Numbered from the whole stretch's first letter, positions 53,467 to 62,464 are shown. The stretch is 62,464 bases of DNA, filler included, from Dugesia japonica (GCA_001938525.1; 6 parts of 6 records of this genome joined end to end with filler, not necessarily neighbours in it); one strand, 5' to 3'. The notes: generated by a model from the letters alone, not told the origin. Made by a program: numbers and translations.

Positions 53467-54759
53467 TGATATTTGACATAGATATTTCATTAAATTGCAT
53501 GAGAATTTTCATCAAGTCATATAATTATTAATAAATATTAAGTTCGAACATTCATACGCTTATTTAATTAAGACTTATACAAAATAATTTTATAATACAT
53601 GCACACTTTTCCAAAAGACAGAATTTTGATATATTTACATGAACTTTAATAAATATACACTGATTAGCTGTAAAAGAAAGGTACTTACCACTGAACCATC
53701 TATTCTATAAAACGTTTTCAATGATCATTATTAATACAGATAAAAACCATCAATCTTTGTCATCAATGTAATAAATCGAAAAACAAGTGTAAAATAAGTG
53801 ATCAATCAGTGAATTTTAACCTAACACTGAGATTTCAAAAATAAATTTTTATTCTTAAAATTGGTCAACAAAGTGTCTTTTCGATAGAGAATATTTCTAT
53901 CGTTACGAATAACATGATTAAAAATCGCAAATCTTTATCCTTGATGAAATAAAATGAAAAATAAGTACTTACTATAGATTGCTTTCCTGTAATATTAAAT
54001 GATGGATGATCCCCGAAAAATATTAAACTTAAAATTTGATGCATGAAGTGAATGGATTATTTAGAATATATAGTGAGATGAACGGGTTAATTACTTGTTT
54101 TAAAATTAGGATGTCTATTTTCAAAAAAACTTTTACTATATTAAGGCGAAAATGCGTGAACAATTAACCTGTCTATTTGAATTTATTGGTTGTAAAGTGT
54201 GATTCAGTGTGAATTATAGAGCTGAATATATGGAATAATTGATAAAAAGATTAAACCATTAATTGGACGATCGATGGATAAATGATTTGAAAGGGTAATT
54301 GAACAGGTTCAAACTAATGAACGCCTTATAAAAACATAAAATAAAATAAATGAAATTAATTTATTAAAATCTAGTTGCTCCACCTAGAATGTTAAATTTG
54401 AAATCCTTGTTTCTACTTAATAATTATATGTATGAACTAGTGGGTCATGAATCTTGATGTCACTTGACAGTATTAGAATCAATAATTTCTATGATTATGA
54501 TTTCTTTGAATACTGCTAGAATGTCACGGGAGTGTCATTCACATTGCACTCCAATTGTACATGTAATAGACTCATACTATGTATGCAATACATCAGATTA
54601 TACTTTTATTACAAAATATAGTATGATTGAAAAGTTTATATATATATAATTACTTTAGAAAACAGTATTAATTTTAATATTAATAAATGTAAATAAATCA
54701 TATTTTACAAATATTTATTTTTTAATTAAAAAATAGTGCTTATCGATATTCATATTTAG

Positions 54760-57700
54760 TCAGTTATTATAAGGACAACAGAAAGAAATGTTAATGCATT
54801 GTTTGAAGTAAAAAACATCTTAAATAAATTGCGAACACAGTACAAACCCATTATTCAATCTGGACTTAAGCCGTTTATTCAACCAAATTTAGCAAAGATT
54901 TACAACACAACAAATAGTACTGATGAAAAATATACAGGAATTAATCTTGGTGAAATAGGTGAATTTTTTAATAGGTTTCAAAATAATTTTTTACCAGCTC
55001 AATATTTTCCGTCGGTCAAAGTGGACAAATTTGATGATATTGATAAACAGAAACAACCAAATTATTTACTGTCCAATGAGAATGATCCAGTTTCAGATCT
55101 AAAGTCTACAACAACAATTTCTAGCAACATGACAATGCAAATTGACAATGGATTGAATTTAGGAAAACAAATGAATATAGCTAAAATAACTTCACTGTTG
55201 GCATCCCAAAGAAATATAAATCCATCGGGTAGAAAATTTTTCATATAAAATAAAGTTGATTCAATTAAATTATTATTTATTATTTTCTATCTGACGACTC
55301 AATCATATTAATAATAATTTTTGATTATAGGAAAATATTAATAAACAACCAATTAATTTTTTTAGTTTTCAAAATATTTTACGAACATTAAAAATCTATT
55401 TTGAGGAAAAAATAATTGCCAGAAATTTAACTAATAAATATATATTACAATTGCAATTATTGCGAGAATAATTGTTGGACATAACCATTGATCGTTTTAT
55501 AGAATTCATTTAATATAAAAGCTTTGATGAAAATTGTGGTTTTTATTATTGATATTGGATAAAAATTCGATATCAATAACAAAAACCAAAATTTTGGTCA
55601 AAGCTTTTATATNNNNNNNNNNNNNNNNNNNTGTAATTTTAAAAGAAACAATAATATCAAGGTTTCTGAAAGATAGATTATTAAAATTAATTATTATTTT
55701 AATTATTATTTGAAACGAATAAGTATTCAATAAACTAGAATTTATGATCATGAGGTGATTGAGAAACAGGCATTTTATGCAGTAGAATTTCTGAGAAATC
55801 TTTCTTCTGTTGAACAAAAGAAAGCCGAATTTAAAGTTATAAGACGTGCTCTAGAATGACAAGTTAGATGTGGTAATTGTTCTATTTATATGGTTCCTGA
55901 ACTAGGAACAAGAAACATTTCGTGTTTTTTTTATGAACAAAAATGAATTGTTTTTTGTTGAGTGTCGGTCTGGTGCATGCAATTTAGAATGCTTTTTAAA
56001 TTTTATTAATTGCTTTAAATAACCAAATTAGCAAAACATGACATCGAAAATACTTCTCATCTAAATATTGCTGTGAGAAAAGGAGTATTGATGATAAAAG
56101 GATTGAAAATATTGATAATTATTTGTGGTATCTACAGATTTTCCTCCATTTTAAAACCTGATAGAAAATTTAATCTTCAAATAGAAAGAATAGTTTCTGG
56201 AGCTGATTAACAATGGAAACCAAATTATAAAATTAGTTCTATCGACAGTGCTTGATTTTATCGCCACATGTTAAGCAATATTTATTAATACATAATAATA
56301 AAAAAAATAATAATAATAATAAAAATAATATTTTTTTACAATTGCAATTATTGCGAGAATAATTGTTGGAGAATAATTGATCGTTTTATAGAATTCATTT
56401 CTAATTAAAGCTTCGATCAAAATTTTTGTTTTTTGATAACAATAAAAAAAATCAAAAATTTTGATCGAAGTAATAATAATAATAATAATAATCCATCATA
56501 ATAATCATTCATATTAATAATAATAATCATATTAGTCATAATCATTATCAATCAGAATTATATTCAGAATAAATATAAATAATTCATAATTAATGATATA
56601 ATTCACTTTAAATGAATAATTAATTCTTATCGAAATTGCATTCATGAACAATTCAAAAATATAAATTGGTGAATGAAATGAAACACAATAGAAAATTAAA
56701 TAAATTACGCAATTATTTGCAGAATTGTTTCTTATAAATGAATATTAAAATCATTTGTATGTATAACATTAAAGAAGCAATGAAATAATTAAAGTTTTAA
56801 AAAATAAATTATGTGAACTTAAATTATATTTTATCTAGGACATTTTCTTATAAACCAACAATCTATCAATAACAAAGATCACATGAATTGTTTAAATTTA
56901 ACCAATGGAAATCAATCAATAATTTCTATGATTGAGTTAGTTTATATATCTACTTTTTTATTTCATTAATAATAGAAATGTAAATAATCACGTAAATAAA
57001 GAAATGGAATCAAACTTATTTTCAAATTCAATCGATTTTACACCATTAAATAATATTAATTTGAACAATACTGATTGGAGAGCCCCAGGAGCTGAATATT
57101 CAGCAAAACAAAGAGAATTAAAACGATCAATATGTAACTCACCAATCAGTTCAGGATCAGATGGNAACAGACAATTACAAGGAATTAATTTTGTTCAGTA
57201 AGATTTTATTTGCATATCTTATTATACAGAGTAAATGTTTAAGTAAAAATGTTTTAAAATTTAAAAAAGCCAATTGAAAATTTTTAATTTCAATTTGAAA
57301 TTAAATTTAATTAAAAAAGGTGAATTTGTTTAAATAATAGTTCATCTTTTTTTATCTGACTTTAACTTCATGGATTTATTTAGTTTTGATGATTTAAATA
57401 TTCAAACGTCAATGGTCATTTTCTCTCACACTCTCAATGAGGTAATAACGTTAAAATTCGAATTCAGATTCAAATTAAGATATATTATGACAGATATTAA
57501 TTTAAAATGACTAAATAAATTTGTAAAAAAATTTTTGCTTTTGTTTTTAAAAATTTTTTCATTTGAATATTTTTAGATGAGTCTAAGATGCAACCGTTAA
57601 ATTTAAAAGAATATTTAAATTCATTAAATGAAATATATTTATATATATAGTTTAACAATTGCAATTATTGCGAGAATAATTGTTGGACATAACCATTGAT

Positions 57701-60146
57701 CGTTTTGTAGAATTCATTTAATATAAAAGCTTTGATCAAAATTTAGGTTTTATTTATTGATATTGGATAACAATTCGATATTTCGACCTTGTCTTCGTCA
57801 TGAATTGACTTTTTAAAAGTCAATTTTAAAGTCTTTAATGAAAAAGTGAATTCCTGACGAAAACAAGGTTGAAATATCGAATTGTTATCTAATATCAATA
57901 AATAAAACCTAAATTTTGATCAAAGCTTTTATATTAAATGAATTCTATATAGTTTAAAATCATTTAAATTAATTCCGAAAACTAAAATTTATAAATCTTT
58001 GAAACTTTCGAAATTTTAGTTAAATGTATTAAATGAATAGGGTAAATATGTATTGTTAATTAAAAATTTAACTGATCGAATATACTATTGATTCAATATT
58101 GTTTGCAAATAAACTTAAACAATTTGATAATGCCATATGTTACAATTATATTATACGAAATGTTGGTAAGAGTTATTGAATAAAGGGATTCCTTTGTAAC
58201 TACTACATGATAGCAGTTCATAGAGATGCCTAATTGTTCAAGTGCGTTGAAAATGTGAATTATTTTAATACATTAGCAACAAATGCTGCAATTTTTACGT
58301 GATCGCTCAAAGACACGGACATAATTATTACGGACGGATAAGACCATGACTTTAAAATCGTGTTATAAATAATTCAAAAAAGAAAGACTTTTGAATTAAG
58401 TAGCTGTTAATAAGTGTAAAGAAAGCTTAAGAATATTGAAATGTACTAATATTTGTTTTCGTATATCGATTAAAATGTTTTGAAAAAATATGACTGTATT
58501 TAATGAAATTTTAATACACATCACCATCTTTAAAACATACAGCAGACAACTCAATGTTTCTTGTTCGTTATCCAGGAACAGCATGAATAGCACGATTAAC
58601 ACGTTTCAAATGATCCTTTTTAAGAATGCATCATAACTTCAAATCTGGCCTCATAGATAAGAATTTTTTTTACCACTAAAGGAAGAATTCTCAATAATTC
58701 TGCCACGTAATTGCTTGTTTCTAAAGCATCTAAAGATCATATTTTCTGACTGAACGAAGACTTATTCGTTTCAAAGAATAAGAAAAACATTTCAACAATA
58801 TATCAATGGTTTTTGATATAGTAAATCTTGTAATTTTTATAAGGAATCCTCCCACAATAGTATTTTTCTTGGACTTCAATCACCACATTTTATTCACCTG
58901 ATTCTCTTTGATATATACCAGTTGTTGCGAATTCTAAATCCGCATGTATTCTACTTATCCATTAATATAATTTGGAAAAAAATCATTAAATATTTTACAA
59001 CTTAGTTTTAATCGAAAAAATTGTTTCTTTTTAATCCATAAATGAAAAAATCATGTTATGAAAAACTTTACAAATATTACAAAATAATCAAGTTTTATTA
59101 TTTCTGCTATTCACTTAATAAATAAATAGATATGTACCACTTTGCCCATAGGCAATTTCAATGTAAATTTCTTACAAAAATCGACCCAATGTATAAAATA
59201 CGTTCACTACCTCTGGTATTTACTCTTATTATACCTTTAATAGTGTTTAAGTTCAAGCCAAAAACACAAGAAATGGCTGCTATGTTATCTCAATTCAAAT
59301 ATGAATCAATTATTATTTTTCTGTTATATTTTATTATGATGAATGTTTTATTAAAAAATTAAATAAAAAATTTCTATTCCAGCTAAATTATATTATCAAG
59401 TATATTTTCAACAAATTAATAATTTGCGGTTTTAATTAATTTGACTAATAAATGACAAAAAAATTAAATTGAATGACAAATATTGTGTTTATTGTTANNN
59501 NNNNNNNNNNNNNNNNNNNNNNNNNNNNNNNNNNNNNNNNNNNNNNNNNNNNNNNNNNNNNNNNNNNNNNNAAATAATGAAAATCATAATCCCATTAATG
59601 GAAATTTGGATAATAATATGGATAATGGTTAAGAGTTTTTTTTGTTTGTTGGTAATATATTAAATTTTTTTAGTTAACAAAAATCATAATGATGAAAATA
59701 ATTATAAACAACAATTTTATGATGGTTTTATTAATCGGACAAATATGGATATAGATGGAAATTCTTCATTTAACAAAAATGATTTACTAAATAATTCTTG
59801 CGATAATGTAGTTAAAATACTTACAAATCTCGATTTAACTCGATTTGTTGATTGTTTTATTAAAAATGAAGTGAGAAATATTTATTAAAATTAAATTCTT
59901 CAAAACTTTTCCTAATATTTAGGTTGACTTTGATACATTTTGTAGTTTAAGCGAAGACGATTTAAAGGAACTTGGTGTTAATACATTTGGAGCCAGAAGG
60001 AAACTAGTATTAGCTATAAATGGTTTGTATTGATTTCATTTAAATTACAATTATTGAGAAAAATAGAAATTGGGTTGTAACATAATTTTCCTTTATTTTT
60101 TAATAATGAATTAAACACTTTTTTAGAAAAATTCATTTTAGAATAA
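54760..60146 (+). CDS. BicC: Bicaudal-C homolog, 3' part: exons 54760-55228, 56839-56935, 56976-57197, (gap)-59627, 59674-59870, 59923-60022, probable last exon 60127-60146
   Basis: SVIIRTTERNVNALFEVKNIL matches the end of the BicC KH-like region; DWRAPGAE matches the conserved (K/R)APGxE motif; C-terminal SAM domain LTNLDLTRFVDCFIKNE|VDFDTFCSLSEDDLKELGVNTFGARRKLVLAI. Splice phases are compatible wherever both ends are visible. Confidence 0.85.
55448..55612. mobile_element. Fold-back derivative of the Penelope-like terminal repeat, ribozyme core deleted
   Basis: Starts with the family end CAATTGCAATTATTGCGAGAATAATTGTTGG and turns round at TTCGATATCAAT into an inverted arm. Confidence 0.8.
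55700..55930 (-). mobile_element. Possible Tc1-type transposase relic
   Basis: Minus-strand TCHSRAR and PVSQSP resemble DNAPCH and WPxxSPDLN. Very degenerate. Confidence 0.25.
56339..56470. mobile_element. Shorter fold-back derivative of the same family, in an (AAT)n tract
   Basis: Same CAATTGCAATTATTGCGAGAAT end; hairpin CTTCGATCAAAATTTTTG / CAAAAATTTTGATCGAAG. Confidence 0.8.
57772..57806 (-). ncRNA. Minimal hammerhead ribozyme, copy D (C3>A, probably impaired)
   Basis: Reverse complement reads AATTC ATGACGA A GAC AAG GTC GAAA TATC GAATT. Confidence 0.6.
57849..57883 (+). ncRNA. Minimal hammerhead ribozyme, copy E (core intact, all stems paired)
   Basis: AATTC CTGACGA A AAC AAG GTT GAAA TATC GAATT; predicted cleavage after AUC at 57878; stem III reduced to palindromic ATAT. 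Confidence 0.75.
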
Positions 60147-61809
60147 TAACAAGGCAATCAATAATATAATCTCCATCATTATTTATGACATATTTCACAT
60201 TTCTACCATACTATCAATACTTTTACACTAGAAGGCCTAATTCACTAGGTCTCGTCTCGAATAACTTTCATTGATAAANNNNNNNNNNNNNNNNNNNNNN
60301 NNNNNNNNNNNNNNNNNNNNNNNNNNNNNNNNNNNNNNNNNNNNNNNNNNNNNNNNNNNNNNNNNNNNNNNNNNNNNNNNNNNNGTATTTTTATCTAAAA
60401 GATTTAAATAAAATTTACAAAAAATTTCTGAAATTTGGTAGATCACAAAAAGAAATATCAAATGATATTTTTAATTTTTAATAATACAAATGGTGTGGTT
60501 AAACAAACTACAATTTTCAGTAAAAAATAATATCACGGCAAATTACGTTACAACCCAATATAAGAAATCAAAACTACTTTTGATAAAATAAGATTTGGTT
60601 TTAAAACATGATTCATACAAATTCAATTTCAAAAGGTGCGTGTAATTGGAATTTATTGATTTAATTAATAGTAAATTATTCATTTGAATACGTAAATGAT
60701 ATTGACTATTTTCAGTATTTTTATATTATTTTATTTAATTATAAAAATAGAAACAAATTCGTAAGATTAATTTTCTTGAAAATGGTTTAAAATAATGCGT
60801 GAAATGTAAATATTCATATTCTGTAATTTTAACAATTTTAATATTATCAACAACTTGTGAAGAATTAAATTAACCAATATTTTAATTTATATGTTAAGTT
60901 TAGAATTCTTTTTTTTAAAAGTAGTATATGAATCAAGTTTTTAATAGTTTCATTATTAGAATGTATCGATTTCAATAATTTTAATTAAATCAACAAAATG
61001 AATACAGATCGTTGTCATCATGATTGTAGTAGTTATCCATGTATGATAAAATTAATTTTTCAAAGTCAAAATAAAACAATCCTCATAAAGTTATTAATTT
61101 ATTAACAATTTATCAATTTCAATCTTTTAATAAATTTTGATTAATTATAGATGTATGAATATAAATAAATTCATTTAGATTAAAAACTAGTAGAAAAATA
61201 TAGATGTTAAATTAATAAAGTCAATGCTTTACATCAAATTATCCTATTTCTAACCAGGTGTAGAAAAAAATTATTTTCTTGTTAGCAGTAGGCAAATTAT
61301 CTAATTCACTTTCCAGAGATAAATTAATTAAATTGAATCTTTAAAAATTTTATTAACAATACTCTTAACATTTTTGAAAATCCCGGATAGTAAAACAAAT
61401 ATATTATTTTATTATTGATAAATCTTAATGACTATAGAAACAATATAAAATTTATTTAAATTATTTTAAGAAATAATGATTTCGATGATTTACAACTGGG
61501 AGTTTCTTTGTAAACTACTAACACTTAAAATGTGTTTTTAAAAACACTGATATTTTTATAAATTTGCATCGAATAGATTCATAGTATAAGAGGTTTGAAT
61601 ATACGCATTTTGGCTGAAATAAGTGTCCATAATGGAAGTAAGTTAAAAATTAAGAGAATCAATGAAATAGTATACTATGATGCAATATACTCGAATATTT
61701 ATATTATTTTAATGTTTGATAAATTAAAGATATTTATTTAACATGACAATTTTCATAATAGTCAGAATAGTCTTCTTTTTTTTGATTCCTTCTCTCTTTT
61801 AATGAATTT

Positions 61810-61904
61810 TCCAATACAGTTACTCGAGAATTATACACCCATCGGGTTATCGAGTTACTCGAAATTTGCTCATTACTCGAGATACCCGGGACTGTATTCC
61901 CTAA
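61810..61904. mobile_element. Small hAT-like MITE with CTCGAG subterminal motifs
   Basis: AATACAGT...ACTGTATT inverted ends and repeated TACTCGA; related-looking motif clusters at 48060-48115 and 52855-52960. Confidence 0.4.
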
Positions 61905-62464
61905 TTATCATAATTCAGTTCTTTTAAAAAAAATTAGTTTTGGAGAACCTGCTTTAGATGATTGGTGACCACCCTTTGATGAAGTTGTGAGTATTGTGAG
62001 TAACTACCACAGGCTGTAGGACAGTAATTTCTTTTTACTGGCTTCGGCCATATCGCATCATATTGAATAAATGACTGATTTCAATTATGTCTCTTATAAC
62101 AGAGACTATCAAATTTTCATTCCATCGAACGATGCATAACACATCTTCACCGCATGATGCACATTAAAAAGTATCAAATTACATTAAGTTTTTGTTCACA
62201 ATGTTTATCAATTTCATTATCTTCGAAAATTTGCCATCTTTATTCAAATTCGTATTACATGAGTGTATGAAACGTTTTATTTTTTTGAAGTTGGACACTG
62301 CCAAAGGTTCGCTAGGGCACCATTAAATTTATCGCTAGTATTTCGCATGATAACTGAGAAATTTTTAATGACTTTTTGTTTATCTATAAGATCTGTACTA
62401 GTAAAAAGAAACAACAAAAATTAATTTAAAATACTCTTTCTAATATAATTTGAACAGTCATAAC

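What the first reader, a model, noticed from the sequence alone, without database searches (positions are those of the whole stretch)
57656..57945. ~290-bp ORF-less mobile unit built from two inverted hammerheads, in a Bicaudal-C intron
Seen: ~105-bp inverted arms each with a hammerhead, a 12-bp TSD, and a small central palindrome (AATTGACTTTT/AAAAGTCAATT) that looks like an aborted extra fold-back. The sense-strand copy E has an intact core; copy D has C3>A. Inference: in the BicC pre-mRNA the antisense arm is transcribed first and would sequester copy E in a long hairpin, a self-silencing layout that could let the element persist in genes. It may be a retrozyme-like non-autonomous family moved by the Penelope-like RT/EN, or a one-off truncated insertion.
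Basis: partly seen in the sequence, partly recalled or inferred. Interest (0 to 1): 0.75.

Follow-up and report, generated by a model that had tools for sequence, protein, structure and literature searches.

The report
Truncated Penelope-type retroelement insertion, fold-back form
The 290-bp palindromic insert with two facing hammerhead-like motifs is real, but it is most likely the ordinary scar that a Penelope-like retroelement leaves when it inserts, not a self-contained mobile unit designed around two ribozymes.

Summary
The anatomy is confirmed. There are 107-nt inverted arms (95% complementary), a 12-bp target-site duplication, a small central copy-back, and a 52-nt extension at one end only. 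Each arm carries a minimal type-I hammerhead-like motif. One copy has a complete core and the other has one core substitution. A relaxed descriptor finds the motif about 0.003 times per 9 kb by chance. No Rfam hammerhead model recognises it, and alone it does not fold stably.

The decisive new fact is that the same 9-kb piece holds two more copies of the family. They share the one-sided extension but fold back earlier, at different points, and lack the hammerhead region. So the palindrome is made anew at each insertion and is not inherited.

The published insertion signature of Penelope-like elements (PLEs) matches: heavy 5' truncation, an adjacent inverted truncated copy, a tail at one end, variable duplications, microsatellite targets and a minimal hammerhead. 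Opposite-strand hammerhead pairs 100-700 bp apart were described in 2014.

It is not a retrozyme, because it has no head-to-tail repeats. No RT/EN gene is in the piece, so PLE membership stays inferred. The host gene is BicC-like by its SAM exon. The self-silencing idea fits the folding energies but is not supported as a design.

The parts
57644..57655 (.). Left copy of the 12-bp target-site duplication
   Evidence: Exact 12-nt direct repeat with 57946-57957 (D6). It ends where homology to copies A and B begins.
57656..57707 (-). One-sided 52-nt extension (tail). It is the 3' end of the unit read on the - strand, and it contains a 9-bp stem-loop at 57661-57683.
   Evidence: Present at the left end only and absent from the right arm. 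The first 32 nt are identical in copies A, B and C (D5). Stem-loop.
57708..57814 (-). Left arm: a 5'-truncated unit copy, sense on the - strand, continuous with the tail
   Evidence: (I1).
57771..57807 (-). It has a 6-bp helix I, a bulged base plus a 3-bp helix II, and a 1-bp helix III with a 2-nt palindromic loop. It carries one substitution at a conserved core position.
   Evidence: Only a partial RAGATH-1 hammerhead match in Rfam, far below gathering.
57815..57840 (.). 26-nt central junction between the arms. Its first 11 nt (57815-57825) are a copy-back of 57803-57813, and the remaining 15 nt are unassigned.
57841..57945 (+). Right arm: an inverted 5'-truncated unit copy, sense on the + strand (the host gene's sense), lacking the tail
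   Evidence: I1. The pairing runs 2 nt into the duplication by chance.
57848..57884 (+). The core is complete, helix I is 5 bp, helix II is 3 bp, and the predicted cleavage is after 57878.
   Evidence: No Rfam match at all when searched alone.
57946..57957 (.). Right copy of the target-site duplication
   Evidence: D6.
55448..55612 (-). Family copy A. It has the same tail, is 94% identical to C over 126 nt, and folds back earlier with a 14-nt turn and a 4-nt overlap. It has no hammerhead region. Its right end runs into the N run 55613-55631, which I did not fill.
56339..56470 (-). Family copy B. It has the same tail, is 86% identical to C over 96 nt, has a fold-back spanning only 56411-56470 and a 72-nt one-sided extension, and has no hammerhead region. 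It is inserted in a (TAA)n microsatellite.
54760..55245 (+). Upstream host coding segment (linker region of the BicC-like gene)
   Evidence: Open frame of 162 codons. It is 50-65% identical at protein level to ORFs on two environmental or run-assembly contigs.
59790..60030 (+). Downstream host SAM-domain exons (59790-59885 and 59923-60030), split by a putative intron of about 37 nt

Best explanation
The insert is a single, heavily 5'-truncated insertion of a short retroelement family that integrates in the manner of endonuclease-bearing Penelope-like elements (PLEs). It is either the 3' end of such an element or a short dependant copied by its enzyme.

Shown:
- The unit reads on the - strand and ends in a stem-loop-bearing tail at 57656.
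- The insert consists of that unit (tail plus 107 nt) joined head-to-head to an inverted second copy of the same 107 nt without the tail.
- The whole is bracketed by a 12-bp duplication of the target.
- Two other insertions of the family nearby have the same plan but turn back at other points.

Inferred:
- The element's RNA was reverse-transcribed at a staggered chromosomal break.
- Synthesis started at or near the tail stem-loop and stopped after about 160 nt.
- The inverted arm arose in one of two ways. Either a second cDNA was primed from the other nick at an internal start site, or the first cDNA switched template onto itself.
- The 12-nt stagger was then filled in, giving the duplication.
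- The hammerhead-like motif is cargo of the unit's 3' region, as in PLE pseudo-LTRs, and was duplicated in mirror image only because this copy happened to be long enough to include it.
- In the host pre-mRNA the two arms should pair into a hairpin of about 120 bp that buries the sense motif. The ribozyme, already weak, is therefore expected to be silent at this site.
For: There are three family copies with a conserved tail and different fold-back points: the spacers are 14, about 10 and 26 nt, and the arms are about 48, 36 and 107 nt. Two of the copies lack the hammerhead region.

There are no terminal inverted repeats at the duplication-delimited ends. There is no ORF longer than 51 codons and no Pfam domain.

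Copy B lies inside a (TAA)n array, and copies A and C abut TA-rich runs.

The motif is found by the descriptor at a chance rate of 0.001-0.003 per 9 kb. One helix II pair differs on both sides between the arms yet stays paired.

Literature on PLE insertions:
- They are highly 5'-truncated, often with an inverted 5'-truncated copy adjacent.
- A 30-40-bp tail is present at one end only.
- The target duplication is variable in length.
- There is a bias toward (TA)n and other microsatellites.
- Hammerheads sit in the pseudo-LTRs (PMC8557442).
- A purified PLE protein nicks and extends both DNA strands and starts reverse transcription at two internal sites in a stem-loop about 90 nt beyond the hammerhead cut site, and the tail is the stretch between those sites (PMC11167929).
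- PLE minimal hammerheads have a short helix I, an unpaired base at the 5' end of helix II and a tiny palindromic helix III. They occur as pairs on opposite strands 100-700 bp apart, ascribed to truncated PLEs (PMC4209133).

Here the predicted cut site lies 67 nt from the untailed unit end and 121 nt from the tailed end.
Against: No PLE reverse transcriptase or GIY-YIG endonuclease is present in the insert or anywhere in the 9-kb piece, so the link to PLEs rests on architecture alone.

The one-sided extension is longer and more variable (52 and 72 nt, and at most 65 nt in copy A) than the published 30-40 bp.

Helix II has 3 bp, against 6-8 bp in the published PLE minimal hammerheads.

No Rfam hammerhead model matches, and the motif alone folds no better than shuffled sequence.

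My descriptor was written after I had seen the motif.

No copies outside this piece could be found, so conservation of the motif across the family is untested.

The covarying pair has no statistical weight with only two sequences. All five arm differences lie at G/C positions, as an AT-biased mutation process would produce.
Confidence: 0.6

Rival explanations
1. The family is a target-primed retroposon unrelated to PLEs, for example a short LINE-dependent element whose cDNA tends to snap back on itself. The hammerhead-like motif would then be a chance resemblance in AT-rich sequence.
For: No Rfam hammerhead hit. The motif is not thermodynamically favoured. Helix II has only 3 bp. The descriptor is post hoc. 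The tail lengths do not fit the published 30-40 bp. No RT/EN gene is in the piece.
Against: The full descriptor hit is expected only 0.001-0.003 times per 9 kb. The motif also shows the specific PLE quirks of a bulged base before helix II and a tiny palindromic helix III. There is no poly(A) or simple-repeat 3' end at 57656. An inverted duplicate combined with a one-sided tail is reported as peculiar to PLEs and not seen in LINE target-primed insertion (PMC8557442).
Confidence: 0.17
2. The family is a fold-back or MITE-like DNA transposon. Its ancestral form would be a long palindrome like copy C, and copies A and B would have lost the centre of the palindrome by deletion.
For: Long palindromes are prone to central deletion (general knowledge). 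Rfam matches all three copies to MITE-derived microRNA hairpin families, all below gathering. The arms are flanked by TA if the tail is ignored.
Against: The ends delimited by the 12-bp duplication are not inverted repeats of each other. The tail is present at one end only, in all three copies. The right end of B lies at a different unit position from that of C, which central deletions would not change. To my knowledge 12 bp is longer than the fixed duplications of the common cut-and-paste superfamilies. In copy A the turn keeps unit-collinear sequence with a 4-nt overlap, as a template switch would leave.
Confidence: 0.1
3. One reading: the two-hammerhead palindrome is itself a heritable, ORF-less mobile unit, retrozyme-like, whose antisense-first layout silences the ribozyme so that the unit can persist in genes.
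For: The hairpin would indeed dominate folding. The sense copy has a complete core. The insert is in sense in an intron.
Against: Sister copies A and B have the same layout without any hammerhead and with other junctions, so the junction of C is private. There are no head-to-tail repeats. The 29-nt hammerhead stretch occurs only twice in the whole window, on opposite strands. One transcript therefore holds one sense motif, and that cannot release a unit-length RNA. The layout is a generic PLE insertion by-product.
Confidence: 0.05

Closest known systems
5'-truncated inverted-repeat insertions of endonuclease-bearing Penelope-like elements (Penelope/Poseidon, Neptune, Nematis clades)
   Same: Heavy 5' truncation; an inverted truncated copy joined head-to-head; an extension at one end only, next to a stem-loop; a target duplication of non-fixed type; microsatellite or TA-rich targets; a minimal type-I hammerhead about 70-120 nt from the unit's 3' end (PMC8557442, PMC11167929, PMC4209133).
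   Different: No RT/EN gene or pseudo-LTR tandem is seen here. The tail is 52-72 nt rather than 30-40. Helix II of the motif has 3 bp rather than 6-8. The genome is extremely AT-rich and the host organism is unidentified.
Dual minimal hammerheads on opposite strands, 100-700 bp apart, in the Schistosoma mansoni genome (Cervera and De la Pena 2014, PMC4209133)
   Same: Two facing minimal hammerheads a short distance apart with no ORF, ascribed by the authors to truncated PLEs. There is an unpaired base at the 5' end of helix II.
   Different: Here the motifs are about 50 nt apart, edge to edge. The complete insertion anatomy (duplication, tail, junction) is resolved, and sister copies show that the pairing is incidental.
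Metazoan non-LTR retrozymes (PMC7229834)
   Same: Short, ORF-less, AT-rich, hammerhead-bearing, and thought to be copied by PLE or LINE enzymes.
   Different: Retrozymes are head-to-tail repeats of 150-450 bp with canonical, efficiently cleaving type-I hammerheads on one strand, and they give circular RNAs. This insert has mirror-image copies and a minimal motif, and it cannot release a unit.
MITEs and fold-back elements
   Same: Short, non-coding, long hairpin potential, intronic, and matched by MITE-derived microRNA models.
   Different: No terminal inverted repeats at the true ends, an asymmetric tail, variable inner and right ends, and a 12-bp duplication.

Membership tests
Penelope-like elements (EN+) | ORF with PLE-type reverse transcriptase and GIY-YIG endonuclease | tested here: not met
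   No ORF over 51 codons in the insert. No RT or GIY-YIG domain in any longer frame of the 9-kb piece. A truncated or dependent copy is expected to lack one. Whether the genome holds the autonomous partner could not be tested.
Penelope-like elements (EN+) | Pseudo-LTR formed by partial head-to-tail tandem copies | tested here: not met
   No direct tandem of the unit.
Penelope-like elements (EN+) | Inverted 5'-truncated copy adjacent to the unit | tested here: met
   Arms 57708-57814 / 57841-57947. The same plan, with other turning points, is seen in copies A and B.
Penelope-like elements (EN+) | [quoted passage not shown] | tested here: met
   52 nt at the left end of C, 72 nt in B and at most 65 nt in A. 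This is longer than the published 30-40 bp.
Penelope-like elements (EN+) | Target-site duplication of variable length | tested here: inconclusive
   12 bp in C. B lies in a microsatellite and the right end of A is masked, so variability cannot be judged.
Penelope-like elements (EN+) | Minimal hammerhead motif in the terminal repeat region | tested here: inconclusive
   Met by the relaxed descriptor with a low chance rate. Not recognised by any Rfam hammerhead model.
Hammerhead ribozyme, type I | Conserved catalytic core with three helices in the correct register | tested here: met
   The + strand copy has the complete core, a 5-bp helix I, a 3-bp helix II after a bulged base and a 1-bp helix III with a palindromic loop. 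The - strand copy has one core substitution.
Hammerhead ribozyme, type I | Match to a curated covariance model at its gathering score | tested here: not met
Hammerhead ribozyme, type I | Self-cleavage of the RNA | not testable with these tools
   The fold of the isolated motif is not the hammerhead shape and is no better than shuffles. Published PLE minimal hammerheads cleave poorly and only as dimers.
Metazoan retrozymes | Head-to-tail repeats with hammerheads on the same strand, able to release a unit-length RNA | tested here: not met
   The two motifs are on opposite strands and there is no tandem array.
Metazoan retrozymes | Canonical type-I hammerhead with loop 1-loop 2 contacts | tested here: not met
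   Helix I is open with no loop 1, and helix II has 3 bp with a 3-nt loop.
MITE / cut-and-paste DNA transposon | Terminal inverted repeats at the ends bounded by the duplication | tested here: not met
   The left end (57656 onward) and the right end (up to 57945) are not reverse complements. The inverted repeat starts 52 nt inside the left end.
Bicaudal-C (host gene) | C-terminal SAM domain of the BicC type, preceded by KH domains | tested here: inconclusive
   SAM domain met, with the best solved relative being BICC1. No KH domain is found in this piece, and one may lie upstream of 53467.

The most novel reading that the evidence does not exclude
The family could be a very short, non-coding, hammerhead-carrying dependant of a PLE, not just debris of a full-length element. 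Its insertions would regularly end in a self-templated fold-back. Copies A, B and C would then be natural snapshots of the still unresolved second half of PLE integration: where the cDNA turns, with what microhomology, and where the second end is sealed. A genome-wide census of such tiny insertions could read that mechanism from sequence alone.
Probability: 0.15. Interest if true: 0.5.

Novelty: new member of a known kind. Interest (0 to 1): 0.25.

Why it matters
If the reading is right, this is one more family that shows the known Penelope-type insertion signature, here in a very AT-rich and still unidentified invertebrate genome.

Its modest value is as a clean worked example. The complete insert, its duplication, its one-sided tail and two sister copies lie within 2.5 kb. 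Together they show directly that facing hammerhead pairs are by-products of insertion and not designed units.

It also warns annotators that such inserts are picked up as microRNA-like or MITE-like hairpins.

For the host, it places a near-perfect RNA hairpin of about 120 bp in an intron of a BicC-like gene. That could attract RNA editing or small-RNA pathways, but this was not tested.

Tried and rejected
**Rfam.** I searched the whole piece, the insert and each arm alone. No hammerhead family matched. The hits were generic hairpin microRNA matches below gathering, plus a partial RAGATH-1 hammerhead match.

**Copies elsewhere.**
- The tail 26-mer and a helix I/core/helix III pattern in the metagenome contigs gave 0 hits.
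- The tail 22-mer in the viral contigs gave 0 hits.
- Low-stringency BLAST in the piece and in the two related contigs L001 and L002 found only copies A, B and C.

**Protein domains.** Pfam scans of 16 frames found nothing except the SAM exon. PDB searches of two exons found nothing useful.

**Host identification.** The representative search with exon 54760-55245 gave only two short unnamed relatives, so the organism is not identified.

**Rejected explanations.**
- Helitron: the insert has a target duplication and its ends do not fit.
- L1-style twin priming: that inverts a different upstream segment, whereas here the arms are duplicates of each other (general knowledge).
- Segmental duplication of A, B and C: their flanks are unrelated.
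- Enrichment of arm differences in the motif as a sign of selection: 4 of the 5 differences fall in the motif, but the motif holds 14 of the arm's 26 G/C positions and all 5 differences are at G/C sites.

- I did not fetch this locus or its flanks from public assemblies, because that would expose the letters of the masked N runs. One of those runs cuts the right end of copy A.
The exons were searched separately by reference.


Full report
**1. What is there**

The piece (window 53467-62464) has about 22% G+C.

- Positions 57656-57945 form an insert bracketed by an exact 12-nt direct repeat at 57644-57655 and 57946-57957 (D6).
- Inside lie two inverted arms of 107 nt, at 57708-57814 and 57841-57947. 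They are 95% complementary and 26 nt apart (I1).
- The arms do not fill the insert. The 52 nt at 57656-57707 stand at the left end only.
- The first 11 nt of the 26-nt spacer (57815-57825) are a copy-back of 57803-57813.
- The inner edge of the left 12-mer coincides, within 1 nt, with the start of homology to two other copies of the family. The inner edge of the right 12-mer coincides, within 2 nt, with the end of the arm.
- The piece holds 15 exact direct repeats of 12 nt or more at 100-600 nt spacing. Such repeats are therefore not rare here. By my estimate, the chance of one landing on both edges is about 5e-5. I accept it as a target-site duplication.

**2. The hammerhead-like motifs**

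I wrote a descriptor for a minimal type-I hammerhead. It requires:
- the conserved core;
- a helix I of at least 4 bp directly abutting the core and the cleavage site;
- an optional unpaired base, then a helix II of at least 3 bp with a loop of 3-10 nt;
- GAAA, then 0-8 nt, then U and a non-G base.

With the strict core it finds one hit in the piece, on the + strand at 57848-57884. With one core position relaxed it also finds the mirror copy at 57771-57807 on the - strand. In 3000 first-order Markov simulations of the piece, the expected number of hits was 0.0027 with helix I of at least 4 bp and 0.001 with at least 5 bp. The bare core heptamer alone is expected 1.9 times, so the core by itself means nothing. 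The helices in register carry the weight.

The architecture is a 5-6-bp helix I, an unpaired base before a 3-bp helix II, and a 1-bp helix III capped by a 2-nt palindromic loop. This is close to what Cervera and De la Pena describe for PLE and other metazoan type-I motifs (PMC4209133). Their helix II is much longer, at 6-8 bp.

The evidence against a working ribozyme is substantial:
- No Rfam hammerhead model matches either arm, even when 65 nt are searched alone at E up to 10. The only hit is a partial RAGATH-1 hammerhead match of 13-16 bits, against a gathering score of 56.3.
- The isolated 41-nt stretches fold into other shapes, with energies no better than shuffles.
- The descriptor was written after I had seen the motif.

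The arms differ at 5 of 107 positions, and 4 of these lie inside the 37-nt motif. All 5 are at G/C positions, and the motif holds 14 of the arm's 26 G/C positions. In this AT-rich genome that is not evidence of selection. Two of the differences fall on the two sides of one helix II pair and keep it paired. With only two sequences this has no statistical weight.

**3. The new fact: two sister copies**

Self-comparison of the piece shows two more copies in the same orientation.

| Copy | Position | Identity to C | Fold-back | Hammerhead region |
|---|---|---|---|---|
| A | 55448-55612 | 94% over 126 nt | 14-nt turn; last 4 nt of unit-collinear sequence double as the first 4 nt of the return arm | absent |
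| B | 56339-56470 | 86% over 96 nt | inverted repeat spans only 56411-56470; 72-nt one-sided extension | absent |

- All three copies start with the same sequence; the first 32 nt are identical.
- The right arm of A runs into the N run 55613-55631, which I did not fill.
- The right end of B lies at a different unit position from that of C.
- B sits inside a (TAA)n array, with TRF arrays at 56286-56330 and 56471-56542.
- The flanks of the three copies are unrelated.

So the family is real, but the palindrome is rebuilt differently at each insertion. The constant part is the tailed end, and the variable part is where the copy stops and turns.

**4. What it most likely is**

This plan matches the published insertion signature of Penelope-like elements:
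- high 5' truncation;
- an inverted 5'-truncated copy adjacent to the unit;
- a tail present at one end only;
- a target duplication of variable length;
- a bias toward (TA)n and other microsatellites;
- hammerheads in the terminal repeats (PMC8557442).

A purified PLE protein nicks and extends both DNA strands. It starts reverse transcription at two internal sites in a stem-loop, and the tail is the stretch between those sites. Those start sites lie roughly 90 nt beyond the hammerhead cut site (PMC11167929). Here the tail carries a 9-bp stem-loop at 57661-57683. The predicted cut site lies 67 nt from the untailed unit end and 121 nt from the tailed end.

Pairs of minimal hammerheads on opposite strands, 100-700 bp apart, were already reported in Schistosoma mansoni and ascribed to truncated PLEs.

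I therefore read the insert as one truncated PLE-type insertion. The unit's RNA is the - strand sense. It was copied from the tail inward for about 160 nt. An inverted second copy of the last 107 nt was then added, either by a second cDNA primed from the other nick or by the first cDNA switching template onto itself. Three copies cannot tell these two routes apart. The 4-nt overlap in A and the stuttering copy-back in C are what a template switch would leave, but that is inference.

**5. What is missing**

There is no RT or endonuclease gene in the insert or the piece, and no head-to-tail pseudo-LTR. Membership in the PLEs is therefore not shown. The claim is that the insert was made in the PLE manner.

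The tail is longer and more variable than in the literature.

I could find no copies outside the piece, so conservation of the motif in the family is untested.

**6. Rivals**

- A non-PLE target-primed retroposon with a chance hammerhead look-alike remains possible, at about 0.17.
- A fold-back DNA transposon with central deletions is unlikely. The true ends are not inverted repeats, the tail is one-sided in all copies, and the right ends differ.
- A retrozyme needs same-strand head-to-tail ribozymes (PMC7229834). These are absent.

**7. Host context and the silencing idea**

- Exon 59923-60030 is the second half of a SAM domain (Pfam SAM_1, E 3.9e-7). Its best solved relative is the SAM domain of human BICC1.
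- The first half of the domain lies at 59790-59885, across a putative intron of about 37 nt.
- Exon 54760-55245 is conserved at 50-65% protein identity on two short environmental or run-assembly contigs.
- All of these are on the + strand, so the insert is intronic and the complete-core motif is in sense.
- No KH domain was found in the piece, so I call the gene BicC-like.
- I searched the exons separately and did not join them.

The whole insert folds as RNA into a near-perfect hairpin of -148 kcal/mol (z -23), against -3 kcal/mol for the motif alone. Sequestration of the sense motif is therefore physically expected. This layout arises in every insertion of the family, with or without ribozymes, so it gives no sign of being an adaptation.

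**8. Verdict**

This is a new member of a known kind and of low to moderate interest.

Steps left out, and the slip I declare about naming the place of one core departure in an early note and script output, are listed under Tried and rejected.

Noticed in passing
window 55448-55612 and 56339-56470: Two further copies of the same family sit in the same orientation within 2.5 kb, both in introns of the same gene. The density is about one copy per 3 kb. This suggests either a very abundant family or local reinsertion.
   Followed up: yes
window 56286-56330 and 56471-56542: Copy B splits a (TAA)n microsatellite, so its target duplication cannot be read.
   Followed up: partly
window 55697-55919 and 58553-58787: A second, older repeat is present in inverted orientation, 68% identical over 236 nt. 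No protein domain was found in its frames and its family is unknown.
   Followed up: partly
window 59886-59922: A putative intron of only about 37 nt splits the SAM domain, in a gene whose other introns are 1.7-2.5 kb and full of repeats.
   Followed up: no
window 57656-57661, 57710-57715, 57940-57945, and helix I of both motifs: Both unit ends and both strands of helix I are hexamers with an AATT centre flanked by one base on each side. This may mark preferred start or stop points of copying, or may only reflect base composition.
   Followed up: no
window 55521-55604, 56411-56470, 57763-57892: Rfam scores all three copies as plant and animal microRNA precursors (mir-548, mir-4679, MIR7504, MIR5512 and others) at up to 63 bits but below gathering. 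These are generic long-hairpin matches and a likely source of false microRNA annotation.
   Followed up: partly
L001 (Logan SRR33002330) and L002 (JGI 3300031718): These are the only detectable relatives of exon 54760-55245: two short contigs with 34% and 27% G+C, one of them from a JGI metagenome. The host organism remains unidentified.
   Followed up: partly
window 54716-54735 and 57283-57305: Two short, near-perfect palindromes of 20 and 23 nt, unrelated to the family.
   Followed up: no
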